Positions 30,067-60,500 of a stretch of DNA of 64,000 bases are shown piece after piece. Origin of the DNA: Anthoceros angustus (taxonomy: Eukaryota; Plantae; Anthocerotophyta); contig VJWM01000221.1 in the NCBI GenBank assembly GCA_010909165.1, positions 237,530 through 301,529 on the forward strand. The letters are read 5' to 3'. The translations under genes were made by a program, and so were the position numbers. A model generated the notes under the pieces. The model worked only from the letters and a program-made list of their open reading frames with translations, was not told the origin of the DNA and searched no databases. Within the stretch, counting starts at the first letter, position 1, and each line of letters starts with the position of its first letter.

Positions 30067-31444
30067 CTCAAACCTCCCGCACGCACACACAGAACAGGCT
30101 GTATGGAAGGCTGTCAATAAACAGCGATTGTGCCAAGTTGTTGCTTTCGTATACAACAATCCTCCCTTGCAATCTGTTGTTAGATTATCAGCACCAACTC
30201 CCCGAGGAATGAGGCATACCGAATCCTGCCAGAACCCAACAGTTACACACCTGGGTCTGGTTGGGCGGCTGCAAATAGATACTTCCGTGAACAGCACAGA
30301 TAACACAGCAAGAGTTGTGGATGAGCTAGAACCGACCCACTACTTGTTTTGCAAGTAGCACCTCACGCTTCCAAGAAGTACGAATCCCCCACGAATAGCC
30401 CTTCTCACCCTCCTAACCCACATCACACACACCAGCCTGCTCGCAGAGCCTCCTCACACGCCTACCACCACAGCAGATTCCCAAGCATAAGCTCGCCTGA
30501 CCATGTTCTTCGCTGCTACTTCCCTGTCTGCCCACAACCCAATTCGCTCTCAAATTGGCTGTCCCAGCAGGCCATCCAACATATCCCGACTCAGAACAAC
30601 AGAGCTCGACAAAAGCATCCCCTCCACTCGCACAGTGCCCCCTAAAGCATCAAGTGACTGCTTCCCACATGAACATCCTCACCCAAACTTTGCTCCATCA
30701 ACACCGCAGCTCCATCGCCCACCATCACTTTACGGGCCCGCACATGCACAACATTCGCCCACATTTTTCGCTACTGTTGGCGGAGGTGAGCAGGTTCCAC
30801 ACTGATCTGTCGCCACTGTTTTCACATGGAGAAAAGTTTTATCCATGAATGATTTTTGCGAATTCCTTATCCTGTTAGAAAACAATCGATGCTTCACTCG
30901 GGCAAATCATCCATTACATTCATATGTACCCCGTCCGGCCCAACTGGTCACATCCGTCTCACCCCCTCCGCCCTCGTGCTTGCAAGTGGATGAGAAGCTC
31001 CAGTGACAAAGCCTGGATGCAGAAAGAAGGCCTCGTGCTGAAAAGAAGGAATATTGAAAGGTGGTCTGGTGCCTGGGGCCTGGGTCGGCGGGGACGCAGA
31101 TTTCAAGGACATCGTTCATGGACCACGTTTTACTCGACTTGTAGCGAACCAGGTCAGATTCCACTTGTAGTGGCTGGAGATGGTGACAAACTCGAGCGTG
31201 AAGTGCACATGGTTACGGCACCCACAACGTAGAGAGGGAACTTAGAGAGTGTATGTAGTCTTGAGAAAACCTAGAGAGGGTATGTAGTCCAGAGAGAACT
31301 TACTGGATGTGCCCACGACCCACATCCCACACTCGGTACTTCTCAGGGAGGCGAATTTCGCAACTCCAGGAAACGTGAATTTGTATCAAGTTTGTACAGT
31401 AAGGAACTTGGAAATTGCAACTTGCAACAGGTTTGCATGCGAGA

Positions 31445-32860
31445 TCATGACCAGTCGATGTAGCGAATGGAGCCTCGGCGCATCCAGAGCTGGTAGCACA
31501 GCATGAAGAATGCGTCCATGGGCTCGGAAGGATTATGCCATGCAAGGTGCACTGCAAAATCTGCTCCTGACTGTTGCATCTCCTCGTACTCCTGGGGGGT
31601 GATGGCTTGTAGCAAGTTCTTCAGTTCCTGTGCTTGCTTGGGGTGTACGATGACAGCGAACTTCTGCCAATTGGCGATGTCTTGGAATGGCATGTCGTAG
31701 AGAAGGTGGTCAGTGATGAGCACAGGGACGCATCCGGATTGGAGCATTTCCAGGAGCCCAATGTCTTCACCTTGGCTTAGAGTAGCGAAGCAGAACCTGC
31801 TGGACAGCATGGCTTCCCGGCAAGAATTCTCATCCCAAGTCTCGACGAAGAGAAAGTCTGCATCGTCCTTCCATGCCTTGTATACCTGTTGCATGAGGTC
31901 CTCTGTCTCCTCCAAGTCCTCGGTCTCCAGGTCCCCGGCGTAGTAGGCCAATGTGGGTCTTCCACTAATTCCCCTTAACGGCGCCTGCATGGCAGCAGGA
32001 GCAGGGCTGGCGAGAGGCATGGTGATGTCCTTGTGTGGGTAGAAATTCGGGTGGCCTCCTTTTGGAAATGGGAAGCAATCTATCCAGACTGAGTTCTTCT
32101 TGAGCTCCAAGAAATTCCTGGATGTGTCCGGGGGGAAATCGTGACATGCAATGAGAGCATGATCCGCTCCCAGGGATCGGTTCCAGTAGGGATAGCTCGT
32201 TCGCAGCACCTGGATGTAGTCTTTGAGATGCTGACCCAACCTCTCAGAGCCTATTGCCGGACTCCGCCATAGAGAGTGCACAGAAATTGGAAGCATGAAG
32301 AACGTCGCCTCTTCCGGGTACAGCGTGACAAAACCGCTCTCTGAAAGCCTGCTGAAGAAGAAGTCTTCTATCCTGTGAGATCCGCTCGATGCTGCTTCGA
32401 AGCTGTAGTTGCCAGATTCACCAGATGGGTAGATGAAGACCTTGAATTCGCCCAACATCACATCGTAATTTGTCGACCAGATGTCGAAGGAGTGGTATAA
32501 CTTGCTCCTCCTCCTCTCCCCTCTTTGTGCGGCCATGAGCTCCCGGCTGTGCGATTTGGAGGTGGAGGCTTGAAGGTTGTTGTCTGCATTCATAAAAGTT
32601 CTCAAAGTGGAAATTGAAGGTGAGATCAACAGCGCTTGTGAGACATGGATCCTGATCAAGGCAGCAGACATACAAGCAGCTACAAGCAACGCCAGAATTC
32701 GAAGCACCCAGCTCCAGCTCCGCACGCAAGCCACAGCCATGACAGGATGTGGAGTGACTGGTGAAGCCGCTGGACTGAATGTTTTTTGTCGGATAACCAG
32801 TCCGAACTGCTGGCGGCAGGCATGCATGCAGTTGCTTTTTGCAGTTGAGCTAATGGCCAA
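31445..32860 (-). CDS. Exostosin-like glycosyltransferase family 47, intronless
   Basis: N-terminal signal anchor, then FKVFIY, YPYWNRSLGADH..ACHD, KDITMP, SSRFC and GCVPV..D...MPF. The start could be 32860 or 32740. Confidence 0.88.
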   Translation of the reverse strand: MAISSTAKSNCMHACRQQFGLVIRQKTFSPAASPVTPHPVMAVACVRSWSWVLRILALLVAACMSAALIRIHVSQALLISPSISTLRTFMNADNNLQASTSKSHSRELMAAQRGERRRSKLYHSFDIWSTNYDVMLGEFKVFIYPSGESGNYSFEAASSGSHRIEDFFFSRLSESGFVTLYPEEATFFMLPISVHSLWRSPAIGSERLGQHLKDYIQVLRTSYPYWNRSLGADHALIACHDFPPDTSRNFLELKKNSVWIDCFPFPKGGHPNFYPHKDITMPLASPAPAAMQAPLRGISGRPTLAYYAGDLETEDLEETEDLMQQVYKAWKDDADFLFVETWDENSCREAMLSSRFCFATLSQGEDIGLLEMLQSGCVPVLITDHLLYDMPFQDIANWQKFAVIVHPKQAQELKNLLQAITPQEYEEMQQSGADFAVHLAWHNPSEPMDAFFMLCYQLWMRRGSIRYIDWS

Positions 32861-33993: not shown

Positions 33994-36519
33994 TTAGGGA
34001 CTTCCGTGGTTCGCTTCGGTCACCGTTACTTTGTGCATGCAGCTTATGGTTGAAGAGTTCGGCTGGAGACCTTCCTGCTGCATCTGATCGAACAGCCTGG
34101 CAGCTTCGTCCTGAAAGCCTTGCTGAGCGTACGCAGCTATCATGGCATTCCATGAAATTACACTGCGCCGAGGCATGTTTTCAAACTCCTGCCGAGCATC
34201 CCCGATTCTGCCACATTTGGCATACATGTCCAGCAGTGCTGTGCGGAGAACAACAGTCAGCTCCAAGCCACTTTTCAGCAGTTGAGAGTGCACTTGCCTG
34301 CCTTTGTCTAACGAGGCCACACTAGCACATGCTTTCAGGGTTGAAGAGTATGTAGCTGCATTCGGTCTGACATTCTCCTGCAACATCTGCTCGAAAAGCT
34401 TGATGGCTTCCTTGCCACAACCTTGCAAGGTGTATCCTGCTATCATTGAAGTCCACGAGACCACATCCCGGCTTGGCATTTCATCAAAAACCCGCTGGGC
34501 ATCTTCTATCTGCCTGCACTTTGCATACATGTCTATCAGAGCATTTCCTAGAGAAAGGTCAGACTGCAGCTTATTCTGGATTATATCGGCATGAACTCTC
34601 CTGCCCACTTGCAGAGATCCTGTGTCCGCACAAGCGTTGAGGACACTGGCCAAAATTCGTGCATTGGGTTTGATCCTTTCATCTTCCAGGTCCTCGTAGA
34701 GCTGAATGGCTTCCTTAGCTCGACCATGCTCAGTGTAGCCTGAAGTCATCGCATACCATGACAGCACATCCCGCTGGACCATGTTATCGAAAACCTGCCG
34801 GGCTTCGTTCAAGCTCCCACAACGTGAGTACATGTACAGAAGAGAGTTACCTATCAGCGGATAGCAATCTAGACCAAGTAGTCTGACTTTGTTGTGGATC
34901 TCCTTGCCAGCTTCCAGTGCTCGTACATCAGCACATGCTTTGAGAACACTGGCGAAGGTGTCTTCCTCCACCTCAACTGCATCCTGCTTCATCTGTTCAT
35001 AGAGCCGCAAGGCTTCCTTTGCCCGACCATGCTGAACACTTCCTGAAATCATGGCATTCCAAGACACTCTATCTTTGTGGGGCATTTGATTGAACACCTT
35101 TTGAGCGTCCTCTATGCTCCCACATTCGGTGTACATATCCATGAGGGCTGTTCCAACCATTAAATCCGACTCCAACCCAGCAACCTTCACATGAGAGTGC
35201 ACTTGTCTGCCTTCATCTAGAGCTGAAACACTTCCACAGGCTTTCAAAACACAGGCAAACGTTGTCTTATCTGGGTCAAAATTCTCTTGCTGCATAAGTT
35301 GGTACAGCTTGATGCCTTCCCACCCAAGCTTGTTCTTCCAACATCCATTTATCATTGCATTCCACGACACCACATCGCGTCTCGACATGCCTTCAAAAAC
35401 CTGCCGAGCATCCTCCATGCTTCCACACTTTGCATACATGTCCACCAGGGTGTTCTGCACAGCCAGATCACTGTCCAATCCAAGCTTGTTTACATCAGTA
35501 TGCACTCGCCTGCCTGTTGCTAATGCAGGGACACTCCCGCAGGCTTTCAAGATGCACACAAAAGTAACCTGATTCGGCCGCACCTTCTCCTCTTGCATCT
35601 GCTTGTACAGCTTGATGGCTTCCAACCCAAGATCGCGCGATGCATATCCTGATATGATAGCAGTCCAAGCCACCACATCTCGTTCTGACATGCTCTCAAA
35701 TGATTCACGAGCCTCAGTCATGCTGCCACACTTGGCATACATGTCAACCAAAGCACTCCCCACAAACAAGTTCGACTCCAAGCCATGCTCCACTATCTGG
35801 GAGTGAACTCGCCTGCCCTCCACAACGTCCCCTGAACCAGCACATGCCCTCAGGACGTAAACAAAAAGCACAGCATGTGGCTTCAAACCCTGTTTCATCA
35901 TCTTATCAAAAAGCTTCAATGCCTCTCGAAAGTTCCCTATATCGACATACCCTCTGATCAGCGAAGCCCACGAGTACGTGTTCTGTTTGTGCATCTTCCC
36001 GAACACATCCCTGGCCTCTCCCATCCTCCCAGAGCTCGCATACAGCCTGACCAGGTTCCCCCCAAGATAAAGGTCCGACTCCCACCCACATCTCACAATG
36101 TGCTGATGCACCTGTCTCCCTTCTGTCAATGCTTCCTTCTCAATGCAAGTTTGAAGCAGGGCGGCGTAGTTCTGCTTGCTTTCGAGAACATTGCCGTCCT
36201 GCTTGAACTCGACCCACAATGCCTCCCGTGCAATTGGATTATCTGCAAGCCATCAAAAACTCATGTTTGGGACCTCCGCACATGCAAGACATCAAAAACT
36301 GATGTTTGGGACCTCCACACATGCCAGCCATGAAGCTATCGACATTCTGATGCGACCCAAGCACTCACCAACATAGGTTTGAGATTTGCCAGCTCCTGCT
36401 GAGCCCCGCAAGCTGGAGAGAGGTGCATACCATAGTCTTCTAGGGGTCCGGGGACTGCATTGGATTTGCCTTCGCCATACTAGTACCAGTTGCCTGCCAA
36501 AAGGCCCATTAATCGTCAT
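33994..36519 (-). CDS. PLS-class PPR protein (PPR3) without E/DYW domains, 2 exons, ~799 aa
   Basis: Exon 1 (36519-36369) encodes an Arg-rich targeting-peptide-like sequence and ends at a GTGAGT donor. A CAG acceptor leads into exon 2 (36242-33994), in frame. Canonical-length P-L-S triplets end right after a P motif. Confidence 0.85.
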
Positions 36520-36927: not shown

Positions 36928-37121
36928 ATACCTTTCTCGGCCTTTTGGCTAAGATCAAGTGTAGTATCTGTTCTTATCAGTTTAATATCTGATACGTGGA
37001 TCATCGATCCACATGATATTAATCTAATTTCTCTCTGGGGCGGGCCACACGGGTAGCTTGCTGCCTTGGCTCCGCGCGCGTCGCTCTGGTATTGCACTAT
37101 TTCCACTGCCTGGCGCACCCA
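36928..37121 (+). ncRNA. U2: U2 spliceosomal snRNA
   Basis: Begins ATACCTTTCTCGGCCTTTTGGCTAAGATCAAGTGTAGTATCTGTTCTTATCAGTTTAATATCTGATA, including the GUAGUA branch-recognition site. Stem III and the loop IV AUUGCAC are present; ~194 nt. Confidence 0.96.
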
Positions 37122-37389
37122 CCCCCTCACAAACAAAAACCAAAACGGATTGCCTTAGAATAGCCGCGGTAACGGCAAAGGATTCCGACATGGAGGGCCA
37201 CAGAAAAAGGTCATTCATGGCAATCCATATAAAATGAGAGCGGTGTATGCGGATACGTAGTACCGAAGGTCTGCCAGCAAAGGTCTACCTTGGAAAGTGA
37301 ACATTTTCAAAGCTGAGGTGGTGCAAATTGGTTGGTAGTCAAGAGGCTTGTTTAGGGAACTCCTGAAAGCTGAAAACAGAAACAGGGTT

Positions 37390-40145: not shown

Positions 40146-41930
40146 ATGGAAACTCCGGGGGGCAAGCGCCACCATCGAGATGGCCAGAGTCACCGAAAGA
40201 AGAAGCGGAGGATTGATGTGAAGATGGAGTACGTTCAACCGTTAGGCGGGCGTACCGGGCCGTTTGTTGGCTACTTCCCCACGGGATTTGATCCAGCCAC
40301 GGCGACCATGGCCGAGGGGAGAGGAGAAGATGTGCCTCCATTAACAGAATTGGTTGCGTTTCAGAATAGCCAGAAGTTTAAGCAGCGGCAGCATCAGCTG
40401 GTTGCCAGGGCAAACGGGAGTGTAGATTTTGTGGGGACGAACTACACTGGTGAAGCTGCTATCTGGCATCCCTGCAGCTATGCACTTGGGGTGTTCAACA
40501 AGGATGAGGGGACGCTGAAGCTGGTGCCGATTGCTGGAGAAAAGGTTTGCTTTTTGTTTCTGCTTCTTTCAGAGGATGAATGCTTGAGGGAGTAGGGGAT
40601 ATGAATCTGGTTTGCAAAGTAATGGCCATCCGTTCAGGTGCAGGTGGCAAGTTTATGTCTAATTGCTTGTGGCATTAGGTTCTCAGAATGGAGCCAAGAG
40701 TGAAAGGCGTGCTGTATGGGCATACCGAAGCCGATGAAGTGAACGAGGCAGACATGACCCCTGAGATGAGGAAGCTTCAGATGGAAAGGTTGACACACAC
40801 TCTTGGCAGTCAGCGCTCAAAATTAAAGGTATGTTCTTCTGGTCTCAGCCCTTTCATCTGTAGAGAGCTAGCAGTTCGGTTCACTGTTGGTGGTCCTGTG
40901 TTTGAAATCTGACTATGGTGATCTTTTTTTGCATCGTGGTTTGCAGACTGAACGACGTGTCAGGGGCTTGATTAAGGAGTCGGCTTTAGGAGAGTTTACG
41001 GCTGAAATGGAGAACTTTATCCACTCTGCTGGACGGAATGCCGAGCTGGTCACCAGGGAGGAAGCATTGGCAAAGGCAAATGCAGAGATAGTTAGGAATA
41101 TCCCACCTCATAACCTTGCGGCCACATCTGTTGTGAACGCCTATCCTGTTGATGAGCTTATCTCTCTCGTGGAGTGGGATAGCTTGGAGACTAAAGAATT
41201 GAAGAAGGCTGCTGCAAAGCCTGCCAAAGAAGAAGTATTGCGGAGGCAAAACGACTATCCAAATTTTGTGCTCAACCGGCTTCGCCGTCTTCGCGTGCAG
41301 GTGTGTGGTTTTTGGCTTTTGCTTTGGTTCATTCAACTCTGTTCTGTTTGTATTGGAGAGGTTTTGGAAGTCTATCGGTCCTTCAGGTGCAGACCACTGA
41401 AGCTTTTGTGTCTGGGCATCCAGGGGGATGTTGACGGTAATGACAGACGCGCTCACCTCTTGGTGTACATCAAGCACCTTCTGTCTTTCTTTTCTGCACC
41501 CCGCCATCTTTTCAGCAGGAGGGGCGGACGAGGTGATTTGGGGGATGTGGAGGGGGCTCTGCGTATTCCCAGTGCTGTTGTAGCAAAGTTCTTCAAGCTC
41601 TTCACGGACACTGATGCTGTCAAGGGTGGTAGTACTCAGTCCAAGGAGCAAAAGAACCTACTGATCAGTTACATCCTTGTTCTTGGGTTAACCGTGGATG
41701 ACTTTGTCTCAGATCCGCATGATCTGGCTGTTGAGCTCAAAATGACCGTGAACCAGCTGAAGCCTTACTATGTGGAGTTGGGGTGCAAGATGGAACAGCA
41801 GAAGGCAGCTGATAGGGCAGGTGTACCTGTGGACCCGCATTCAGGACGAGGGAAGTTCAGGGTAACTTTGCCTATCCCGCTGAAATTCCCTTTGCTGACC
41901 CCAAAGATAAAGAGAGGCAGGGGGAGGTAG
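40146..41930 (+). CDS. RPA49: RNA polymerase I subunit A49/PAF53-like, 4 exons, ~469 aa
   Basis: Exons 40146-40544, 40679-40828, 40947-41300 and 41424-41930 join in frame. Motifs PFVGYFPTGFDP, VDFVGTNY, YALGVFNK, NIPPHNL.A...AYP and LISYILVL are present. Confidence 0.82.
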
Positions 41931-43251: not shown

Positions 43252-46200
43252 GTGCCACCCATAACATTGCTGTCGGGTCATCGGAACGCAAGAGTCCTCA
43301 GTGGACAGAGGAAGAGAAGCCGCTACCACTACGCAGTATATACAATGCTTTCTGTTGTTCCTGGTTATGAGACAGACCATGGGTGGCCGCTTATCATGAA
43401 GGGCAGCCTGGAGAATGCTAGCGGGACTTCACATTGGATGATAGGGGGTACGAAAAATGTTGTTGGGCCCATCAGAGCTGGCAGAGGGAGCGTTCTCAGT
43501 GATTTACATCAACAAGGGGAGGATTCTTGGGCTGTGCTAATCTCGGGGTATGCCAAGTCCGGGCAAGCTAGACAGGCTCTGGAAATCTACGAGGAAATGC
43601 GGCAAGATGGAGTTGAGGCAAAGCCACACACCCTTGTGGATTTGTTGAAGGCATGCACTAGCTTGCTGGACCTGAAACGTGTCAAGCGGATTCACGCAGA
43701 CGTGGTAAGAAGTGGTCTGGAGGCAGATTTGTATGTGTGCACGATGCTTGTAAATACTTATGCAAAATGTGGAAGTGTGGAGAACGCTAGGCGGGTGTTT
43801 GAGGAAATGCCCCATCGGGATGTGGTTTCCTGGAATGCCATGATAATGGGCTATTCCCAGATGGGGAAGAGTGAAGAGGCTTTGAAGCTGTATACAAGGA
43901 TGCAACAGGACGGTGTGGTCCCCACTGACAGAACATATGTTGGGGCACTAAAGGCTTGCAGTAACATAGCGGAATCGAGGGAGGAAAACGGTGGTGATGT
44001 GACAATTGTTAGAGAAAGATGCCTGGAGACTGTGAGGGCAATTCACGGTGCGGTTCAAAAGGGTAAGTTTGAATCGAATGTGTTTGTGGGGAACATGCTA
44101 GTGGATGCGTATTGCAAATGTGGGAGCCTTGAGGATGCTAAACTGGTGTTTGAAAGAATGCCTGCTCGTTCTGTCGTTTCCTGGACTGCGATGATTTTTG
44201 GGTATGCCCAGATGGAACAGGGTGAAGAGGCTTTGAAACTGTACAGACGGATGAGAGAGGAAGATGTGGTTCCCGACGACCGAGCATATGTCAGCGCACT
44301 CAAGGCTTGCAGTAGCATTGCCGAATTGTGGGAAAACAATGGCAATGATGGACTATTGAGAAGACAATGCCTGGAAACTGTAAGATCCATTCACACTGAT
44401 ATTCGGAGGGGGAAGTTAGAGTTGAATGTGTTTGTGGGGAACATGCTGGTAGATGCGTATGCAAAATGTGGGAGCTTGCAGGATGCAAGGCAGGTGTTTG
44501 AGAAGATGCCACATCGTGATGTGGTTTCATGGAACGCTCTGATCTTGGGGTACTCCCATACAGACGAGGCTGAGGAGGCTGAGGAGGCTTTGCAGTTGTA
44601 CACGCGCATGCGACAAGAAGGTGCTATTCCTAACAACCGGACGTATGTTGGTGCACTGAAAGCTTGCATTGTCATAGCAGGATCGGGAAATGGGGTTGTT
44701 AAAGAAAAATGCATGGAAACTTTGACAGCGATACACGCAGACCTTGGCAAGGAGAAGAGTGCACTAGACAAGTTCGTGGGGACAATGCTGGTGGATGCAT
44801 ATGCAAAATGTGGGAGTCTGGCCAATGCTAGGTGGGTATTTGATAAAATGCCTCACCGCGATGTAGTGGTGTGGACCGCCATGATTTTGGGATGTGCACA
44901 GATGGAGAAGGGTGAAGAGGCTTTACAGCTGTTTAATCAGATGCAAAAGGAAGCGGTGATCCCAAATGAGCGAACATATCTTGGTGCACTCATGGCTTGC
45001 AGTAGCATTGCAGAACGTGAGGATACCGATGGCACTGTCAGAACACTTGTTAAACAAAAGTGTTTAAGAACAGTGAAAGCCATCCATACAGATGTCGAGA
45101 GGGCGGGGTTTGAGTCGAACCGGTTCTTGGGGAACATGCTAGTGGATGCTTACTCCAAATGTGGGAGTCTGCAGGATGCCAGGCGAGTTTTTGAAAAAAT
45201 GCCTCAACGTGACGTGGTTTCATGGAATTCCATGATCCTGGGCTATGCCCAGATGGAGAAGGGTGAAGAGGCTTTGCACTTATTTACACAAATGAAACAG
45301 GAGGGCGTCATCCCAAACGACCGAACATACGTAGCTGCTCTCAACGCCTGCGGAAGTGTGGCAGGTCTGGAGAAGGGAAAGGAAATTCATGCCCAGATTT
45401 TAAAAGCTGGCTTGGACGCTGGCTCCTTCATGTCCAACAGTTTGATAGACATGTATGGCAAATGCTCTAGCATGGTGGATGCCCGGCAGTTGTTTGAACT
45501 GATGCCCGTCAAAGATATCGTGGCATGGAATTCCTTGATAGGTGGGTATGCCAGACAGGGAGAAAGTGAAGCTGTCTTCGAGCTGTTTGACAGGATGAGG
45601 CAGGAGGGTGTAGAGCCGAACGAGATCACGTTTGTGGGTGTCCTTATTGTATGCAGTCATGTGGGTCTAGTGGACAGGGGCCAGCAGTACTTCGAGGCTA
45701 TGAGCAAAGAATTCGGCCTCACTCCTACTATCCAACACTACAACTGCATGGTGGATCTGCTTGGCCGTGCAGGCCAGGTGTACAAAGCCATGGAGACAGT
45801 GATGATGATGCCTGTCCAATGTGACAGTGCAGTCTGGAAATGTGTCCTGGGAGCTTGTCAAAAATGGGCAAACGTCGAGCTTGGAAGGCAGGCATTCGAA
45901 TGTGCTACCAGGTTGAATGCAAGTGATGCTGCACCCTATCTTCTAATGTCAAACATATATGCTGCGGCTCACATGCCGGAGGAGGCAAGCAAGGTTCAGG
46001 CCATGAGAGTGAACTCACGAGCAAGGAAGGAACCCGGACGCAGTTGGTGGATGGATATGTGCGGAAATGCACACGTGTTCGTAGTCGGGGATCAAATCTC
46101 ATCAAACCAACCGAGACATGTATGCTCAGTCGGGACAACTTCTGTTGAGGTAGAGGAAGAAGAGATGCGAGTCGCAAAATTCTCTTCGTGTTATAGGAGA

Positions 46201-46326
46201 AGAAGAAGCTTAACACGCTTGTGCTGCCATATTCATACAATAATGGACTTACCCTTCAGTCAAGGAGGAATCCCTTCTGGTTCTCGACTGGCCCTTCCTA
46301 ACTCATCCATGTTCTTGGACCCATAA
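43252..46326 (+). CDS. PLS-class PPR protein (PPR4) with E domain and WW-type PG box, no DYW
   Basis: 1024-aa ORF of P-L-S triplets with KEPGRSWWMD. The true start is uncertain. The C-terminus after VVGDQ is probably frameshifted, with an alternative stop at 46151-46153. Confidence 0.88.
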   Translation: MPPITLLSGHRNARVLSGQRKRSRYHYAVYTMLSVVPGYETDHGWPLIMKGSLENASGTSHWMIGGTKNVVGPIRAGRGSVLSDLHQQGEDSWAVLISGYAKSGQARQALEIYEEMRQDGVEAKPHTLVDLLKACTSLLDLKRVKRIHADVVRSGLEADLYVCTMLVNTYAKCGSVENARRVFEEMPHRDVVSWNAMIMGYSQMGKSEEALKLYTRMQQDGVVPTDRTYVGALKACSNIAESREENGGDVTIVRERCLETVRAIHGAVQKGKFESNVFVGNMLVDAYCKCGSLEDAKLVFERMPARSVVSWTAMIFGYAQMEQGEEALKLYRRMREEDVVPDDRAYVSALKACSSIAELWENNGNDGLLRRQCLETVRSIHTDIRRGKLELNVFVGNMLVDAYAKCGSLQDARQVFEKMPHRDVVSWNALILGYSHTDEAEEAEEALQLYTRMRQEGAIPNNRTYVGALKACIVIAGSGNGVVKEKCMETLTAIHADLGKEKSALDKFVGTMLVDAYAKCGSLANARWVFDKMPHRDVVVWTAMILGCAQMEKGEEALQLFNQMQKEAVIPNERTYLGALMACSSIAEREDTDGTVRTLVKQKCLRTVKAIHTDVERAGFESNRFLGNMLVDAYSKCGSLQDARRVFEKMPQRDVVSWNSMILGYAQMEKGEEALHLFTQMKQEGVIPNDRTYVAALNACGSVAGLEKGKEIHAQILKAGLDAGSFMSNSLIDMYGKCSSMVDARQLFELMPVKDIVAWNSLIGGYARQGESEAVFELFDRMRQEGVEPNEITFVGVLIVCSHVGLVDRGQQYFEAMSKEFGLTPTIQHYNCMVDLLGRAGQVYKAMETVMMMPVQCDSAVWKCVLGACQKWANVELGRQAFECATRLNASDAAPYLLMSNIYAAAHMPEEASKVQAMRVNSRARKEPGRSWWMDMCGNAHVFVVGDQISSNQPRHVCSVGTTSVEVEEEEMRVAKFSSCYRRRRSLTRLCCHIHTIMDLPFSQGGIPSGSRLALPNSSMFLDP

Positions 46327-46492: not shown

Positions 46493-46564
46493 TGTGGCTG
46501 CTGGGAGTTGAGCCCAGACTATCACGGTTGCAACCAAGAATTCTTACCATTAAACTACAGCCAC
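46493..46564 (-). tRNA. tRNA-His-derived tRNA-like element; anticodon position reads GCA and the anticodon stem is broken (probable non-decoding or pseudo-tRNA)
   Basis: The minus strand reads GTGGCTGTAGTTTAATGGTAAGAATTCTTGGTTGCAACCGTGATAGTCTGGGCTCAACTCCCAGCAGCCACA. It has a perfect acceptor stem (GTGGCTG/CAGCCAC) and T stem (CTGGG/CCCAG), with a backbone matching plant cytosolic tRNA-His(GTG) as recalled. Confidence 0.8.
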
Positions 46565-47617: not shown

Positions 47618-47710
47618 AGGCGTCCAAGTGTGCCTTCCTGCAGCAGCTGACTTGTCTCGTCTTGCTCACTCCAAGCTACACCTCCCGTAGTGCTACCAGC
47701 GGCAGCAGCC

Positions 47711-49038
47711 ATGACGGCCGTTTCCGCCTCCATTAGCAGCTCCACCTTCGCCGGCCAGTCCGTGCTCAAGGGCGTTAGCGAGCTTTCCAGGAAGGTTAAT
47801 GGCGGCAAGGCCGTCGAGTCAAGGATTACTATGAGGAGGACAGCCAGCTCCAAGCCCGACAGCATCTGGTAGCCGTGATTTCTTGCCCCTCAATTTGCTG
47901 CAGCTGTGCAAGATTATGTAGTCTTTCGATGCAATGCAGAGCAACGCATTTGCCCTGTTCATTCATTCTAAGAGCTAGTTGCCTCCGCGCAATGGATTCT
48001 CTACTTTGTTTGCATTCATTCGACATTTCCAAGTGCTTGTTTGCCACCGTGCAGTAGATTTTCCCCTCTTCTTGCTCTGGTTAAAGTTTTCTAAGTGCTG
48101 ATTGCCTAGGCCTCCGCGCACTGGATTCTCTCTTTTCCTTCGACCGTTCTAAGTGTCTGTAGCCGGTTGCACTCTGCAATGAGTTTCCTCCTTGGCTGCG
48201 TTAGACTCTATTCCATTCAAGTGCTGTTCTCCTCAGTGAGCTGCATCTGTCATCCCTCTCAGCTGGAATTTTGGATGCAAGCGTCCAGACTCTATTCATT
48301 CTTGGATGCATCGAGCTGGATTTGAGAGCAAGCTTATTCCCGGATGCAATGTGATCTAAATCAAGAAACACGGATTGTGCTTGCAGGTACGGCCCAGACA
48401 GGCCCAAGTACTTGGGCCCGTTCTCTGGCGAGCCCCCGAGCTATCTGAAGGGAGAGTTCCCCGGCGACTACGGCTGGGACACTGCCGGTCTGTCGGCTGA
48501 CCCCGAGACCTTCGCCAGGAACAGGGAGCTGGAGGTGATCCACTCCCGCTGGGCCCTTTTGGGAACACTGGGAATCGTGACCCCTGAGATTCTGGCGCTC
48601 AACGGGGTGCCGATCCAGGAGCCGGTGTGGTTCAAGGCAGGCGCTGTCATCTTCTCCGAGGAGGGGCTCAACTACCTGGGCAACCCGGCTTTGATTCACG
48701 CGCAGAGCATTCTGGCGGTGCTGGCTGCCCAGGTGATTCTCATCGGCGCCGTGGAGGGTTACCGCATTGCAGGCGGCCCCTTGGGCGAGGTGACCGACCC
48801 TCTCTACCCCGGAGGCGCCTTCGACCCTCTGGGCCTGGCCGACGACCCCGATGTCTTCGCCGAGCTGAAGGTGAAGGAGATCAAGAACGGCAGGCTGGCG
48901 CAGTTCTCTGCTTTCGGATTCTTTGTGCAGGCCATTGTGACTGGCAAGGGCCCCATCGAAAACCTGCTTGACCACCTTGCCGACCCCGCCAACAACAATG
49001 CTTGGGCCTATGCTACCAAGTTCGTGCCCGGGAACTAG
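47711..49038 (+). CDS. LHCB2: Major light-harvesting chlorophyll a/b-binding protein (LHCII, Lhcb2-type), 2 exons, 269 aa; mature protein lacks Met and Cys
   Basis: Exons 47711-47868 and 48387-49038. Transit peptide, then [49 protein letters not shown] and [13 protein letters not shown]. The single intron falls in the SIW codon, as in Lhcb2-type genes. Subtype assignment is tentative. Confidence 0.93.
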
Positions 49039-49654
49039 AGTGTTCCGTCCACAGACTGTAGGCGGGCGTCTGGCTTCTACTCAACTCGATGGAAGCAAGC
49101 ATCTTGTGAATCACGACTTGTCCGCCCTTCTGATTTCAGGACAGAGCGTGTAGTTTAGCCTTCTGTACAGTATCTCTCGACAGTTGAGTAATGTACCAGA
49201 TCTGGTTGTGGTTTGAATCATCAAGGTAACTCACACTTGAAAAGCTGTGACGCATCCACACAACATTTCTAGCAACTGTTCGTCCACGTCTTGTGCATCC
49301 ATTTCGTGTTCTCAAGCTTCCGCAACAGTCGCGTCCCACGTTGGAAAGTTTCCGAAATTTCAGACAACATGTTACTCTACACAATATTATTAAGTTGACA
49401 ACTTGTCGTAAACTTTTCCAGGTCAGAAACGGGGTTCAGGCTTTCCTGTTTACAGTTCAGGAATAGAAACATTATGACTGAAGTGAAATCAGATCATACG
49501 AACTCACAGAGTAATGGGTGCCCTTTACTTACAAAACTATCTTTCACAAATGTTATGGATGAAGCACTATTTTCTGGAGCACTATTTAAAGCACACGATG
49601 GAGTGAACTGTGGGATCTATGGTGATTCTATCCCTTCACCTGGTCCAAGAGCTT

Positions 49655-54554: not shown

Positions 54555-57500
54555 TGATCGGTTTGTAAGCTGATAAGCGTACAAGATAAACTTTCATCAA
54601 ATAAAGAATGAATACAAAAATGTGTTTGTAATGTGCCTTTTATACTTGACTTAATAACGCTTCACTTAACCCTAACTAGCATTGCTTAACTATAGGTTTG
54701 GTTTGTATCCAACACTCCCTCTAAAGCACCTATTAGGTAAGTGATGTATGCATAACGGAGGTTCACATTGCTCGGATCACCCTTAGCGTTCCTTGTCAAT
54801 TTTCGCGCTGCTCCGGTAAAACCCGAACCCTCGAACGGGGCATTCGCTACCATAGTCTTGCTTATGCATCATCTTCCTTGGCCTCCCACCACGTCTTGAC
54901 CACCACGCTCGCTCGCCTCAACGCCATGAGGACTCGCGGTGGAAGAGACACCGATGGCGTGAGGCCATGTGTGCGTGAGAACGTGGCAAGGAGAAGGAGG
55001 CAGCACCAGGAACAAGGGCTAGCGTTGCGGGACCAGAATGGGTCGCCTGCAACTTAGGAGGAACTTGTCGAGATTAAATAGCTTCCGGTGGTAGGGACAT
55101 ACCAGGCGGAGCTTTGGCGGAAGGACCCCAGACAGCCATTTCCGCTTCTCGAATCGCAGCTCCCTTGCGGCTAAGTTGAGGGCTGCCACGAGCAGATTGT
55201 GGAGCTCGAGTCACGGCATTTCTTTGGGATCCGTTACTGTGATGAGCCGCAAGATGTGAAACCTTGTAAGAGCCCGGCCGGGATGATTTAATCCTAAGGT
55301 TAGCTTCATCCATCCGTCATCCTTGTGAGTGTGCATACGCTGTAAGTGACCTAACGTGTATCCTAGACTCCCTCTGATGAGCTTGCTGTGTGCAGTTACG
55401 TGTGCAGGCAGGTGAACTGCTAGACACTCCACACCACACCTAGGGAACTTCAGGGTTCCCGCCCCCTCCCACCAGATAAGTCCTATGACCCATCCTTGAA
55501 GTAGGCAGAGTAATCGGCTAACCCAAGACCCTCAAGATGCTGATAGTGCTTGTGTTTTGGCAAGCCCTTTGTGAGGATGTCACGCCACGTTGTCCTCTGT
55601 ATGGACGTAGTCCACTTTAACCACACCTCTCTCGACCACATCAGCGTGGTGATCTGAATTTCAATATGTTTAGTACGTGCATGAAATCTAGGATTTGCCA
55701 CTAATGCAGTGACATATTGTCACAATGTAACTTTGTAGGTGCCATCTTCTGGTCAAGGTCCTTGAGGAAGCTGCGCTCCCACTCTCCTTCAAGCATCTGT
55801 AAGTGATTTGTACTCCCTCTGTGGAGGAGAGTGCTATGGATGTTTGCTTTTACAAGACCCGGTTGGCGAAGAGAGGAAGAAGCGAGGTTGAGAGACTCTT
55901 TCTGGAATCACTATCGGATGCCCAGTCAGCGTCCGTGAATCCTTCCAGGGTAAGCATTTTACAGCCACTGCTTCTGTAGAATAAGCCTATCATATGTGTT
56001 CCTTTCAAATATCTGAACACACGCTTGATCGCAACTGATGGGCTTTTCAGTCGCTCGAAGCGTGAGACGGTGCTAACGGCATATTGGATATCTGGCCTGG
56101 TCCAGTTTGCAACAAATATGAGACTGCCCACAGCGTGCCTATAGGGAATAGCAGACATGTCTTTGATCTCTCCCTCTGACTGCGGACACTACTCACTGGT
56201 AAGCTTCATTCCTGTCGCATATGGAGTGGACGCAGGCCTGGCTTGATCCATTTTAAACTTACGCAGGATTTCTCCTATGTACTTGTGTTGATGGATTATT
56301 AGAGACCTTCTGTCGACCCTAAATGTCATATTCCAGTGATCGAGCTCCCGATATCCTTCATGTCATATCGGGTCCTCGATATCCTTAACGCCACTTGACC
56401 CTTATTGTTGCGAAATTACGTCGTCCACGTACAAGGCCGAACAAAATCAGCACCTCGACTAAGGCGATATCGTTGGAGTGCGTGCTTTGAACAAAACCAA
56501 TCTCAAGTAAGTAAATGTGAATGGTAATATACCATACCCTTCCACTTTGTTTTAGCCATATATGCATTTCGTGAGTTTTAGGACTTTGCCAGATAACGCT
56601 TGTCCCGGTATCCTCAGTCGCATCATATAAATCTCTTCATCAAGTGCTCGTGAGGAAGGTGTACACGTCCATTTCTTTGTAGATCCAAGTCAAGCTCGGC
56701 CCCAAAGCAAGTATGATCCTAATGGATCGTGCACAGCGAGAAGGTCTCGTAATCCAAGCCTTCAACTGTGAAGCCTCTTGCTACAAGTCTAGCTTTGTAT
56801 CTAGCAATTTCCCCTTTGCATTTAATTTTAGCTTGAACACCCACTTACAAGATATCGGCTTTCTCCTTGTGGCGGATCCGTGAGGACCCAAGTCTCGTTT
56901 TAATAAGAGATTGATATTCGCCTCGATGGCCACCTTCCACTTGAGACTGTCGGGGCATGAGATGGCCTCTTTGTAGGAGCGAGGCTCAAGAGCCGGTAAA
57001 ATGTCGACCATAGCTCCAAAAGTCCTCCAGTCAATAGAGGCATATGGAGGCTCCTTCCATCCCTCAGGAGGAGGTCTGTGCCTAGTGGAATGGCGAAGTT
57101 CAGGTTCGGGTTCTGCCACATGCTCAAGTTGCGCAAGTTCGGGAGGAGCTGGACGGTCAGGCAAGTCAATATCATCCGCTGCATGTTCAGCTGGGACAAC
57201 ATTGTCAGAATTTTCACTATGGCTATCATCTGACTCTGATGCGTCTTCCCCCCCTGATGCGAGATCCTCTGGAGCGGCAGGAGCCATGGGTGGCACAGCA
57301 GGTACAGCAGGAGGCTCAGCATCATCTTGGGGATACGAGGACATCAGTCGCCGTCCACGGTTCGAACTCCTTCGAGCGGAAGAGCGTCAAGAGGGGATGC
57401 GAGCAGTTGGGACGGCTCGATAAAAGTAACACTACGGGCAAGGGTATCAGAGGAGCATCATATAACTTATAAGCCTTGGGTGTTCACATCCAGAAAGAGG

Positions 57501-60500
57501 AAAGCACAGGCCTGTTGTCCAATTTCTTCCGCTTCTGTGGGATATAAGCATAGGCCTTGGAACCCAGCGAAGATGAAGGAGACTAGGCTTACGCCTCCAG
57601 AAGACTTCAAAAGGAGTCTTGCCAGGGACAGAGCTGGTAAGCACTCTGTTGAGGATATAGGTGGCGGTGACGATGGCCTCCGCCCAGAAGTCCTGAGGTA
57701 AGCTAGCCCACAAGAGCATGCTGCGAGTCATTGAGAGCAAAGTCTGATTTTTACGCTCAGCAACTCCGTTCTGTTGTTGGGTGTAGGGCACGATCAGCTG
57801 GCGCTGGATTCCATGCTCCTGGAGAAATGCGTCGAAAGCAGTGTTCACAAACTCAGTACCATTATCCGTGCGAAGTACCTTGAGGAGACAGCCGGACTGC
57901 CTCTGCACCACAGGTAACCATTCCCGGAAATAGCCTAGAGTGTCACTCTTAAGATGCATAGGATAAGTCCACGAATATCTGCTGAAGTCATCTGTAATTG
58001 TTAGATAATAGAGGGCACCACCCAGTGAGGGCTGGTGAATTTTTCCAGAGATATATCGCATGGACTAACTCCAACACTGTTGCTCTATGTGCATTCTTGA
58101 ACGGAGCTCCAGCTTGAGAATACAAGACTCAAACGGAAGATCCTTAAAGCGGGATGGCAAGGGTTCTCGGTGGCGGAAAGCTTGGACATGTCTATGAGCT
58201 TGTGCCGATTAGCATGCCCTAAACGCCATGCCACAAAGATGCCACTGGGAATTCAAAAGAGCTGCTCTGTAGAATAGGCTGGAGGCGAACCGCAGACAAG
58301 CTGCTGGATCATGCATACTCCCTTGAAGACACAGTTGTTGGATGGCCCACCTTGTAGAAGCAGCCCTCATCAACCCGCATCTCATATAGGCGGGGCATGA
58401 GTTTGCTCAACGACAACAGTTCTTGGCCATATCACGGGACAAAAGTACACCATGGACGGTCGAACCATCATCAAGGAGGAAAGTACAGTGCCATGACCCT
58501 CAACTCATGAGCTAGTATCACTCCGCTCATCCCCAAGCAACACCTTGTCTTTCATGTTACATAATGTTAAAGTTGAAAAAAGGTGCTTGTCATTGCGAGA
58601 TGTGTGGTAGCACCGGAGTCCAGGTACCAACATCCAGCATCATGCAAAGAGCTTGCGAGGCAAACGGTAAGAATCTTTACTGTGCCTTTGGGGCTTTCTC
58701 CCTTTTCCTTGACTGCAACGTGTGCTGACTGCTTTGAGACTTTCTGTGGGTCGCCGGCCTTCTTCTTCCGGCACTCACGAGCCCAATGGCCAGCCACACC
58801 ACACCAGTTGCAATTCCCAGTTCGAGGGAGGCGAACGGAAGATGAATCTCGACCTCCGGCTTGCCTTCCAGTGCTGGTCCGAATTTCTGACAAGGACTTT
58901 GTCACCTTTGGTTTTATGTCCTCCTGCGAGTTAATACGGCCTGTTCTTCCCGAAACAGGGCACTGATGATCTCCTCTACTGTGATGGAGGGAGGAGCACC
59001 GCCCGAGTCGGATAGGGGCATTGAAGCTCTTGATAAAGGTTTGATATGAGGGTGGCGGGGAGGTTAACTGTGCTACCTCAACTTCATCAGTGGTGGATCC
59101 AAAAGCCTTCATTTGGGCTCGCAGCTGCCTAAATTTTGTGACATGAGGAGCAACCCTCTCACCTTCACGCAAACGAAGTGAGTAGAATTCCATGCGCACA
59201 ACATTGTAAGCATGCATGTTTTGGACATCATATGTGGCTACGAGTTGATCCCAAATTCCCTTCCCAGTAGTGTGGTACTCTACATCAGGTACGAGGACTT
59301 CATCTAGACCATGGACTAGTAATAGCTATGGAATTTAACCGATTCCATTTTTCTATATCGTGAGGCGGGGTGGCATTGGGATCGGGTTTGCATATGTCCC
59401 ATCTACCACTTCCCATACCCTCGCCAATCAAGGTGGTTTTCATGCGGACCTTCCAGACGGAAACTTGGTCCCATTAAACCGATCCTTCTCCTTTAATTCG
59501 AGGTATATGTGGGATTCGTGAGTACCCATCCCAAGTGCAAGGTAAAGGCGGAAGGATGCTTTCTTTCTAGAGACTAGAGCTCTTGATAAGAGTGAGACAG
59601 GCTAACACACACTCGTGATTATGATCGAGTTAGTTGATGGCCTTCAAACTCTTATGCTGAGAATTTGTGGGCCTTACTCGTTACTAACCTAGGCGATGCG
59701 AGGGAGGCCTGGGTCTTGGTTTGGGTCCAGGATGATCATGTGGGCTGCTCCAGCCCCGCCTCGTCGCCTCCCGGCATCGCAAGGGTTAATCAACGCAAAG
59801 TAGAAGCCAATGCGAAATGGGGTTAGAAACCCTAACTAGTGAAAACCAAACGTAGAATCTTGTTCCCTAATCGCGTGTGTCCTTCTCATGTGGCAAGGCA
59901 CACAGGTGTAGGCGGCTGCGGAAGGCTTGAAGAGTCGCAAAGAGGTGCACATTGGAGTGGCGGCGGAAATCCTTCACACCGCTGTTGGCAATGTGACACC
60001 GTTTCGATTCTCCTTGGCGTTTCAACTTTCTGCGGAAGCTTCACAAGGCGATTCTTGGCGCTGGGGCCAAGGATGCACTCAACGACACTTTGAAATTCAA
60101 TTGGTTCATCATCTCCGCAAGGCGTGATGTCAATCTTCAGTCATGTTCAAATTGTTAATCCTCCGCCGAATCTGTCCTGTCTTGAACATCGTGTTTCAAA
60201 GATTCTGCCGTGATAGCAGGTAAGTGTTCTCTCAACTCTCGTGGCCACTGCCCGGTGATTGAAGGGCAACCCTTGATCTTGCTTTGCCTTGAGATTGATC
60301 TCTTGTCCTGTTGTCTGCAGTTGGAGGGAATTGTCTCAACTCGAGTTTCCGGTCTTCAGAACAAATCTGGATTTTGGGCTCTCGATGACGTGCCTAAACA
60401 AAGCGTCATGTCGGATTTTGGATAGGGAAATTTAAATGTCTAGGCGGTTTGGACCGAATGTCTATTGGCAAGATCTCTAAGCGAGGCGCGGGTAATCCCA

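What the first reader, a model, noticed from the sequence alone, without database searches (positions are those of the whole stretch)
47711..49038. Sulfur-free LHCII: candidate sulfur-sparing antenna isoform in a land plant
Seen in sequence: the mature protein after ITM/RRT contains no Met or Cys codon. The only sulfur residues in the precursor are the initiator Met and the Met at the transit-peptide junction. All conserved LHCII sulfur positions are replaced by multi-base codon changes: RWAM to RWAL (CTT), ALGC to TLGI (ATC), VILM to VILI (ATC), and RLAMFSM to RLAQFSA (CAG, GCT). Chlorophyll ligands (E65, H68, Q131, E139, E180, N183, Q197, H212 equivalents) and the RRT phosphosite are kept, the ORF is intact and codon usage is GC3-rich. 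These changes cannot be homopolymer errors. Established: the sulfur-poor cpc3 phycocyanin of Calothrix/Fremyella and Chlamydomonas LHCBM9 are induced under sulfur starvation. Inference: this gene is a convergent sulfur-economy LHCII. I do not know of one described in embryophytes. The GSQIF to GAVIF and AIW to AVL changes may also alter the Chl b/neoxanthin region.
Basis: partly seen in the sequence, partly recalled or inferred. Interest (0 to 1): 0.9.

Follow-up and report, generated by a model that had tools for sequence, protein, structure and literature searches.

The report
Sulfur-free light-harvesting antenna gene in a hornwort
This plant, probably a hornwort, has a working gene for its main light-harvesting antenna protein that contains no sulfur once processed. 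The same sulfur-free version occurs in liverworts and peat mosses, so it is probably an old sulfur-saving spare antenna that no paper I could find describes in land plants.

Summary
A two-exon gene (47711-47868 and 48387-49038) encodes a 269-aa LHCII precursor. Its only Met residues are M1 and M41, which sits at the inferred transit-peptide cut, and it has no Cys. All chlorophyll ligands and the WYGPDR trimer motif are kept.

The gene is real. RNA contigs from the same species match it exactly and run into the spliced junction. Transcripts of three related species carry the spliced junction itself and differ by 26 synonymous changes to 1 non-synonymous. Canonical paralogues with Met73 and Cys79 are expressed in the same RNA sample, so sulfur loss is specific to this isoform.

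It is not a one-off. Sulfur-free orthologues exist in the hornwort Nothoceros (94% identical), the liverwort Calypogeia and Sphagnum, and Riccia has one Met. Together they form a clade outside the canonical land-plant LHCII clade, even after all sulfur-bearing columns are removed. Sulfur-free LHCII in Coccomyxa is a separate origin (AU p = 5e-5). No vascular-plant member was retrieved.

Sulfur sparing, as described for Chlamydomonas LHCBM9 (which still has 4 S atoms), is the best reading, but its induction by sulfur starvation is untested. No paper found describes such a protein in land plants. Another note from this scan reports a sulfur-free RbcS elsewhere in the same genome; I did not check it.

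The parts
47658..47710 (+). 5' UTR, at least as far upstream as the RNA contig reaches
   Evidence: An exact-match RNA contig of the same species covers 47658-47871 with 0 differences (record 1). There is no ATG upstream of 47711 within it.
47711..47868 (+). Exon 1 coding part: transit peptide (M1 to M41) and the mature N-terminus [12 protein letters not shown]
   Evidence: Translation. tblastn of the protein back to the window. RNA contig at word depth 283.
47831..47833 (+). Met41 codon at the inferred transit-peptide cleavage site (ITM|RRT). It is the last sulfur residue of the precursor.
   Evidence: The cleavage site is inferred by homology with Lhcb1/2 precursors and was not shown here.
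47869..48386 (+). Single intron (GT..AG, 518 nt) splitting the Trp codon (TG|G) just before YGPDR
   Evidence: The joint 47867/48386 appears in RNA contigs of three related species. In the same-species run, a loose end at 47871 continues into exon 2. The same intron position occurs in Calypogeia, Sphagnum and Riccia orthologues and in canonical bryophyte paralogues.
48387..49038 (+). Exon 2: the LHCII core (three membrane helices, all chlorophyll ligands) and the stop codon
   Evidence: Pfam Chloroa_b-bind, E = 1.6e-46. Full-length matches to solved LHCII chains, E = 1e-121 to 1e-124. Exact RNA contigs cover 48460-48675 and 48661-49176.
48556..48558 (+). Leu73 codon (CTT) where canonical land-plant LHCII has Met73
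   Evidence: Related species carry CTC here, which is still Leu.
48574..48576 (+). Ile79 codon (ATC) where canonical LHCII has Cys79
48742..48744 (+). Ile135 codon (ATC) where nearly all other LHCII have Met135
48901..48903 (+). Gln188 codon (CAG) where other LHCII have Met188
   Evidence: The same M188Q recurs in liverwort, Mesotaenium and Coccomyxa sulfur-free proteins.
48910..48912 (+). Ala191 codon (GCT) where canonical LHCII has Met191 (Cys in many chlorophytes)
49039..49176 (+). 3' UTR, as far as the RNA contig reaches
   Evidence: Exact-match RNA contig 48661-49176 (record 8).

Best explanation
Shown. This is an intact, spliced, transcribed nuclear gene for a major-LHCII-type chlorophyll a/b protein whose mature part has no Met or Cys. 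It belongs to an old low-sulfur LHCII clade found in hornworts, liverworts and Sphagnum. That clade is distinct from the canonical Met/Cys-bearing LHCII paralogues expressed in the same species. The organism is probably an Anthoceros-type hornwort, which is an inference.

Inferred. The protein folds, binds the usual pigments and forms trimers like ordinary LHCII, because every ligand and the trimer motif are kept. Because it costs no sulfur, the plant can keep building or replacing its most abundant membrane protein when sulfate is scarce. The Met and Cys of degraded canonical LHCII are then freed for proteins that cannot do without them. This is the logic described for Chlamydomonas LHCBM9 and its Parachlorella homologue, taken here to zero sulfur and reached independently.
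For: - Sequence: 0 Met/Cys after M41, with all ligands kept.
- Transcription and splicing: exact RNA contigs from the same species, and the junction in three related species.
- Purifying selection: 26 synonymous to 1 non-synonymous among the listed differences in congeners, and 94% identity to Nothoceros.
- Isoform-specific: canonical paralogues reading ...RWA-MLGTLGCIFP at word depth up to about 9850 in the same RNA run, against about 300 for this gene. Nothoceros canonical paralogues have 5-6 sulfur residues.
- Conserved clade: supported at 94/81 after removing 10 sulfur-bearing columns, with the hornwort + liverwort node at 99/91*. A hornwort-only origin is rejected at p = 5e-4.
- Repeated evolution: the sulfur-free state needs at least 7 changes on the tree, and the same M188Q/L and M135L/I substitutions recur.
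- Selective depletion: Met falls from 4.06 to 0.56 and Cys from 1.94 to 0, while Tyr barely changes (8.41 to 8.56) and His is unchanged.
- Precedent: LHCBM9 has 4 S atoms against 6-7 in other LHCBMs (PMC4344250). LHCBM9 and the Parachlorella homologue rise more than 1000-fold under sulfur deprivation (PMC4724957).
- Unchecked lead: another note of this scan reports a sulfur-free RbcS in the same genome.
Against: - No expression data under sulfur limitation could be obtained.
- The gene is already expressed at a low but clear level in what are presumably standard cultures. It could therefore be a constitutive minor isoform.
- Three of the eight compared positions (L73, I79, L128) are shared with ordinary algal LHCBM proteins that still carry 2-3 sulfur residues. 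Part of the 'depletion' is thus inherited rather than selected.
- The survey of sulfur counts is biased, because the database queries were themselves sulfur-free proteins.
- Upstream motif counts (SURE, EIL-type) do not separate low-sulfur from canonical genes.
- No member was retrieved from Marchantia or Physcomitrium. If the role were essential, this absence would need explaining.
Confidence: 0.5

Rival explanations
1. Oxidation-proof or photoprotective stress antenna. Met and Cys are the residues most easily oxidised by singlet oxygen and peroxide. Under this reading they were removed so that the antenna survives high light, desiccation and rehydration, or other oxidative stress. Sulfur saving would be only a side effect.
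For: - The canonical Trp at position 128 is also absent (Trp 5 against 5.9).
- LHCBM9 has been proposed to act as a quencher or protective subunit under stress (cited in PMC4344250).
- Bryophytes are poikilohydric (background knowledge).
Against: - L128 is also the state of ordinary algal LHCBM proteins, so the Trp 'loss' is probably not derived.
- Tyr and His, which are also oxidisable, are essentially unchanged.
- In vitro, LHCBM9 was not quenched, and its authors favoured low sulfur cost as the reason for its induction (PMC4344250).
Confidence: 0.2
2. A constitutive minor LHCII isoform with its own structural place, for example a particular trimer position or a partner in a PSII or PSI supercomplex. 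It would be a retained algal-type ('LI-type') paralogue. The absence of sulfur would be a by-product of that ancestry plus a few neutral changes, without nutritional meaning.
For: - Basal expression in four species without any known sulfur treatment.
- The clade groups with members that keep two Met (P0020 and P0055, pattern LIMMN) and with Riccia, which has one Met.
- Many chlorophyte LHCBM proteins have only 2-3 sulfur residues.
Against: - Met135 and Met188 are invariant in all 32 canonical rows, yet both were replaced several times independently and together, by the same few residues.
- In the survey, zero sulfur is far commoner than one (17 against 2). That is not what drift from 2-3 would give, although the sampling is biased.
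Confidence: 0.25
3. Not a functional gene: a pseudogene, a contaminant or an assembly artefact.
For: Other notes on this genome mention frame-breaking assembly errors elsewhere.
Against: - The reading frame is intact with canonical GT..AG splicing.
- RNA contigs of the same species match exactly.
- Congeners differ by 26 synonymous to 1 non-synonymous change.
- Orthologues in other bryophyte genomes share the same intron position.
- The gene sits among ordinary plant genes, including PPR, GT47 and a PIN/PILS-like carrier.
Confidence: 0.02

Closest known systems
Chlamydomonas reinhardtii LHCBM9 and its Parachlorella kessleri homologue LHCB1 1779_t
   Same: Each is a major-LHCII paralogue with fewer sulfur residues than its sister paralogues in the same organism. 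It coexists with canonical isoforms that are expressed far more strongly in replete conditions. The proposed role is sulfur sparing (PMC4344250, PMC4724957).
   Different: - LHCBM9 still has 4 S atoms, and its two conserved Met were suggested to be essential (PMC4344250). The hornwort protein has none.
- The hornwort protein is a streptophyte gene. Chlorophyte sulfur-free LHCII (Coccomyxa) does not group with it (AU p = 5e-5) and has a different intron structure.
- LHCBM9 itself was not in my data set.
- Induction by sulfur starvation is shown for the algal genes and untested here.
Canonical land-plant LHCII: Lhcb1/Lhcb2/Lhcb3 of seed plants and the LHCBM genes of bryophytes (solved structures such as 1rwt, 2bhw, 8c29)
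   Same: - About 82-85% identical over the whole core, matching solved chains end to end.
- Same chlorophyll ligands, trimer motif and basic N-terminus with Thr3.
- Same single-intron position as the canonical bryophyte genes.
   Different: - It lies outside the canonical clade, which is supported at 98/93*.
- It has L73, I79, I135, Q188 and A191 in place of M, C, M, M, M.
- It has L128 in place of W, and GAVIF in place of GSQIF or GAQIF.
Sulfur-free LHCII of Coccomyxa viridis and C. subellipsoidea, [Myrmecia] bisecta and Mesotaenium endlicherianum (database proteins; I found no paper on them)
   Same: The same five-position solution, L-I-L-Q/L-A/N/V, with zero Met/Cys in the core. Coccomyxa P0107 is 85% identical to the Calypogeia orthologue.
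   Different: - Coccomyxa proteins nest among trebouxiophyte LHCBM (99/91*), and the gene has many introns.
- [Myrmecia] bisecta was not placed in the tree.
- Mesotaenium sits unresolved just outside the land-plant clade. It could be either a relative of the bryophyte clade or another independent case.
   Same: The same principle of elemental sparing: an abundant protein is replaced by a paralogue that lacks the scarce element.
   Different: These are unrelated protein families. No such isoform of a land-plant photosynthetic antenna appeared in the literature I searched.

Membership tests
Major LHCII (Lhcb1-3 / LHCBM) of the LHC superfamily | Chlorophyll a/b-binding domain (Pfam PF00504) spanning the three-helix core | tested here: met
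   E = 1.6e-46, covering profile positions 1-162 of 162.
Major LHCII (Lhcb1-3 / LHCBM) of the LHC superfamily | Chlorophyll ligands E65, H68, Q131, E139, E180, N183, Q197 and H212, and the helix-bridging Arg70 and Arg185 | tested here: met
   All present at the positions that align to spinach 1rwt.
Major LHCII (Lhcb1-3 / LHCBM) of the LHC superfamily | N-terminal trimerisation motif WYGPDR | tested here: met
   [14 protein letters not shown], spanning the exon junction.
Major LHCII (Lhcb1-3 / LHCBM) of the LHC superfamily | Pigment binding, trimer formation and location in thylakoids | not testable with these tools
   Requires reconstitution or proteomics.
Canonical land-plant LHCII clade (seed-plant Lhcb1/Lhcb2 with the ordinary bryophyte and fern LHCII) | Falls inside that clade in a phylogeny | tested here: not met
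   The canonical clade of 26 rows (98/93*) excludes it. It lies in a sister clade of 11 low-sulfur rows (94/81) in a tree built without the sulfur-bearing columns.
Sulfur-sparing antenna isoform (functional class of LHCBM9) | Markedly fewer sulfur residues than the paralogues of the same organism | tested here: met
   0 here, against paralogues carrying M73 and C79 in the same RNA run. Nothoceros has 0 against 5-6.
Sulfur-sparing antenna isoform (functional class of LHCBM9) | Induced, or preferentially kept, under sulfur deprivation | not testable with these tools
   No run with 'sulf' in its library words was listed.
Sulfur-sparing antenna isoform (functional class of LHCBM9) | Common descent with the chlorophyte low-sulfur or sulfur-free LHCII | tested here: not met
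   One clade for all sulfur-free proteins is rejected at p-AU = 5.4e-5. The Coccomyxa gene structure differs. LHCBM9 itself was not in the data set.

The most novel reading that the evidence does not exclude
Bryophytes keep an ancient, dedicated sulfur-free set of their most abundant photosynthetic proteins: this LHCII, and possibly the sulfur-free RbcS noted elsewhere in the same genome. The set would be switched on when sulfate is scarce. Such a nutritional programme would date from before the three bryophyte lineages split, possibly from before crown land plants, and would have been lost in vascular plants. It would also show that LHCII needs no Met or Cys at all to function.
Probability: 0.25. 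Interest if true: 0.8.

Novelty: new variant of a known kind. Interest (0 to 1): 0.66.

Why it matters
LHCII is the most abundant membrane protein of plants, so its sulfur content is a real item in a plant's sulfur budget.

- A conserved, naturally sulfur-free LHCII shows that none of the five near-invariant Met/Cys positions is needed for the fold or the ligands. This runs against the suggestion that the two Met kept in LHCBM9 are essential (PMC4344250).
- It gives a ready-made template for sulfur-free or oxidation-resistant antenna engineering.
- If the gene responds to sulfate, it would be the first elemental-sparing antenna isoform in land plants. It would also be a clear case of convergent evolution with green algae, testable in the transformable hornwort Anthoceros agrestis and in Sphagnum, which lives in nutrient-poor bogs.
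- Its apparent absence from vascular plants would bear on how nutrient economy changed once roots evolved.

Tried and rejected
- Other LHC genes in the window: tblastn found only this one.
- Upstream motifs: I counted SURE (GAGAC), EIL/TEBS, G-box and GATA motifs in 1 kb upstream of four low-sulfur and two canonical genes. Nothing separated the groups.
- Sulfur-treated RNA runs: none was listed. The first call to the run finder failed as busy.
- Neighbouring genes: PPR, RNA polymerase I A49, GT47, a PIN/PILS-like carrier and copia fragments. None has a link to sulfur.
- Intron position as a marker of the low-sulfur clade: rejected, because canonical bryophyte paralogues share it.
- A single origin for all sulfur-free LHCII: rejected by the AU test.
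- A recent hornwort-specific duplication: rejected.
- Timing of the duplication relative to the bryophyte/vascular-plant split: unresolved. A bryophyte-specific duplication is not rejected, at p = 0.0595.
- Taxonomy of the environmental members P0017 and P0020: the contigs are about 1 kb metatranscript pieces with no taxon given.
- Literature: seven searches found no description of a sulfur-free LHCII in bryophytes.
- The antisense ORF at 48361-48975 (204 aa) is taken to be a by-product of the high GC3 of the sense gene.

Full report
**1. The observation**

The region holds a two-exon gene on the + strand. Exon 1 is 47711-47868, followed by a 518-nt GT..AG intron (47869-48386), and exon 2 is 48387-49038. 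The joined CDS is 810 nt and encodes 269 aa.

Met occurs only at positions 1 and 41, and Cys not at all. M41 lies in ...SRITM|[17 protein letters not shown], where Lhcb1/2 precursors are cut. That cleavage site is inferred by homology. If it holds, the 228-aa mature protein has no sulfur atom.

The protein has a full Chloroa_b-bind domain (E = 1.6e-46). It matches solved LHCII chains end to end at E = 1e-121 to 1e-124.

Alignment to spinach 1rwt sets exon-2 residue i equal to Lhcb1 residue i+16. In that numbering the protein has L73, I79, I135, Q188 and A191, where canonical LHCII has M, C, M, M, M. All chlorophyll ligands, the two bridging Arg, Y112 and WYGPDR are kept.

GC3 is 0.81.

**2. 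It is a live gene, and the trait is isoform-specific**

- One RNA run (X1) holds half of the sampled words of the stretch. It gives contigs identical to the window over 47658-47871, 48460-48675 and 48661-49176, at word depth about 283-332. A loose end at the exon 1 boundary continues into exon 2.
- Contigs of three related organisms show the 47867/48386 joint directly.
- Of the 27 differences listed inside the CDS for those relatives, 26 are synonymous and 1 is not. The Leu73 codon changes CTT to CTC and stays Leu. Only the best-supported 40 of 75 differences were listed, so this is a sample.
- In the same X1 run, other contigs overlap the conserved parts and then diverge into ...ATG CTC GGA ACA CTC GGC TGC..., which reads M-L-G-T-L-G-C. 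Their word depths reach about 9850.
- So the species expresses canonical paralogues with Met73 and Cys79, apparently far more strongly. Word depth is a poor measure of expression, as the tool itself warns.

**3. Relatives**

The nearest protein (94% identity) comes from the hornwort Nothoceros aenigmaticus and is also sulfur-free after its transit peptide. This, the many PPR genes in the window and the 48% GC suggest an Anthoceros-type hornwort. That is an inference.

Other members:
- The liverwort Calypogeia fissa: sulfur-free.
- Several Sphagnum proteins: sulfur-free.
- Riccia fluitans: one Met.
- Two environmental sequences: two Met each.

Nothoceros, Calypogeia, Sphagnum and Riccia all also have canonical paralogues with 4-8 sulfur residues.

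Across all 261 proteins retrieved, 25 are sulfur-free over the core. They come from hornworts, liverworts, Sphagnum, the zygnematophyte Mesotaenium, the trebouxiophytes Coccomyxa (two species) and [Myrmecia] bisecta, and environmental sequences. None is from a vascular plant, Marchantia or Physcomitrium, and 187 have the M-C-M-M-M pattern.

Absence from those groups is tentative. Each search lists only its best 120 hits, and the queries were themselves sulfur-free.

**4. Phylogeny**

I built a maximum-likelihood tree of 71 cores, first with all columns. I then rebuilt it after removing the 10 columns that ever hold Met or Cys. Both give the same picture.

- Land-plant LHCII (99/96*) splits into two clades.
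- The low-sulfur clade has 11 rows (94/81). Window + Nothoceros is supported at 100/84*, and adding Calypogeia and Riccia gives 99/91*. An environmental sequence, the two-Met pair and Sphagnum join further out.
- The canonical clade has 26 rows (98/93*). It holds the ordinary LHCII of hornworts, liverworts, Sphagnum, ferns, seed plants and Netrium.
- Coccomyxa sulfur-free proteins nest among trebouxiophyte LHCBM (99/91*).

AU tests:

| Hypothesis tested | p-AU |
|---|---|
| Hornwort-only clade | 5e-4 (rejected) |
| One clade for all sulfur-free proteins | 5e-5 (rejected) |
| All bryophyte rows as one clade | 0.005 (rejected) |
| Bryophyte-specific duplication | 0.0595 (not rejected) |

The sulfur-free state needs at least seven changes on the tree.

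The clade therefore predates the split of the three bryophyte lineages. Whether it predates crown land plants is open.

Gene structure agrees with this picture. Low-sulfur and canonical bryophyte genes share the single intron before YGPDR, whereas the Coccomyxa gene has many introns.

**5. What changed, and from what**

The state table shows two recurrent types at positions 73 and 79: M/C and L/I. Both occur in chlorophytes and streptophytes.

Ordinary L/I-type algal LHCBM proteins still carry M135, M188 and C, M or N at 191, giving 2-3 sulfur residues. Sulfur-free proteins are L/I-type with L or I at 135, Q or L at 188, and A, N, T or V at 191.

So part of the difference from flowering-plant LHCII is probably old. 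The decisive steps are the losses of M135 and M188, which are invariant in all 32 canonical rows. These losses happened repeatedly and with the same few residues.

Depletion is selective:

| Residue | Canonical clade | Low-sulfur clade |
|---|---|---|
| Met | 4.06 | 0.56 |
| Cys | 1.94 | 0 |
| Tyr | 8.41 | 8.56 |
| His | 3 | 3 |
| Trp | 5.9 | 5 |

The one-Trp difference reflects L128, which is also the algal state.

**6. Mechanism**

Best reading (confidence about 0.5): a fully functional trimeric LHCII subunit that costs no sulfur. It would be used to maintain the antenna when sulfate is limiting, while the sulfur of canonical LHCII is recycled.

The precedent is LHCBM9. It has 4 S atoms against 6-7 in other LHCBMs, and its authors favour low sulfur cost as the reason for its induction (PMC4344250). 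LHCBM9 and its Parachlorella homologue rise more than 1000-fold under sulfur deprivation while the other LHCBMs fall (PMC4724957).

Rival readings:
- An oxidation-resistant stress antenna (0.2).
- A constitutive minor isoform whose lack of sulfur is incidental (0.25).
- An artefact or pseudogene (0.02), which the RNA and selection evidence excludes.

The step from 'sulfur-free and conserved' to 'used for sulfur sparing' is inferred, not shown. No sulfur-treated RNA run was listed, and upstream motif counts were uninformative.

**7. Novelty**

Seven full-text searches found no description of a sulfur-free or sulfur-sparing LHCII in bryophytes or any land plant. The library lacks most subscription journals, so this is not proof of absence.

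The concept is known from green algae. The complete absence of sulfur, the old bryophyte-wide clade and the independent origin are new as far as I can tell. I therefore class it as a new variant of a known kind.

Another note of this scan reports a sulfur-free RbcS elsewhere in the same genome (s1-278022). I could not check it. If true, it would suggest a coordinated programme.

Noticed in passing
another piece of the same genome (scan note s1-278022): An earlier first-reader note reports a Rubisco small subunit with no Cys or Met in the mature protein. Together with this LHCII, it would point to a wider sulfur-sparing set of abundant chloroplast proteins.
   Followed up: no
window 46493-46564 (-): Rfam scores this as a tRNA (46.8 bits), but ARAGORN calls it tRNA-??? 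with an odd two-base anticodon reading. It lies about 1.1 kb upstream of the LHCII gene and is also the subject of scan note s1-316673.
   Followed up: partly
window 36928-37123 (+): A full-length U2 spliceosomal snRNA gene (160.5 bits, model positions 1-192).
   Followed up: no
window 43252-46326 (+) and 33994-36219 (-): Two long intron-free PPR genes. The first has an E motif and so is RNA-editing type. This fits a hornwort genome rich in editing factors.
   Followed up: no
window 28738-30306 (-), 31445-32860 (-), 40887-41930 (+): ORFs with Pfam matches to Mem_trans (PIN/PILS-like auxin carrier), the exostosin GT47 glycosyltransferase and RNA polymerase I subunit A49.
   Followed up: no
window 56781-59217 (-): Fragments of a copia-type LTR retroelement (integrase core and gag matches).
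   Followed up: no
P0226 (Mesotaenium endlicherianum), P0107 / P0195 (Coccomyxa), P0206 ([Myrmecia] bisecta): Fully sulfur-free LHCII proteins also exist in a zygnematophyte and in several trebouxiophyte algae, with the same M188Q/L and M135L changes. I found no paper describing these either.
   Followed up: partly
P0044 (Netrium digitus) with P0083 / P0102 (Nothoceros) in the tree: A zygnematophyte LHCII groups tightly (100/97*) with hornwort canonical paralogues. This could be real or could reflect cross-contamination between transcriptome assemblies. It affects how the age of the duplication is read.
   Followed up: no
window 48361-48975 (-): A 204-aa ORF lies antisense to exon 2. It is most likely a by-product of the GC3-rich sense frame and not a gene.
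   Followed up: no
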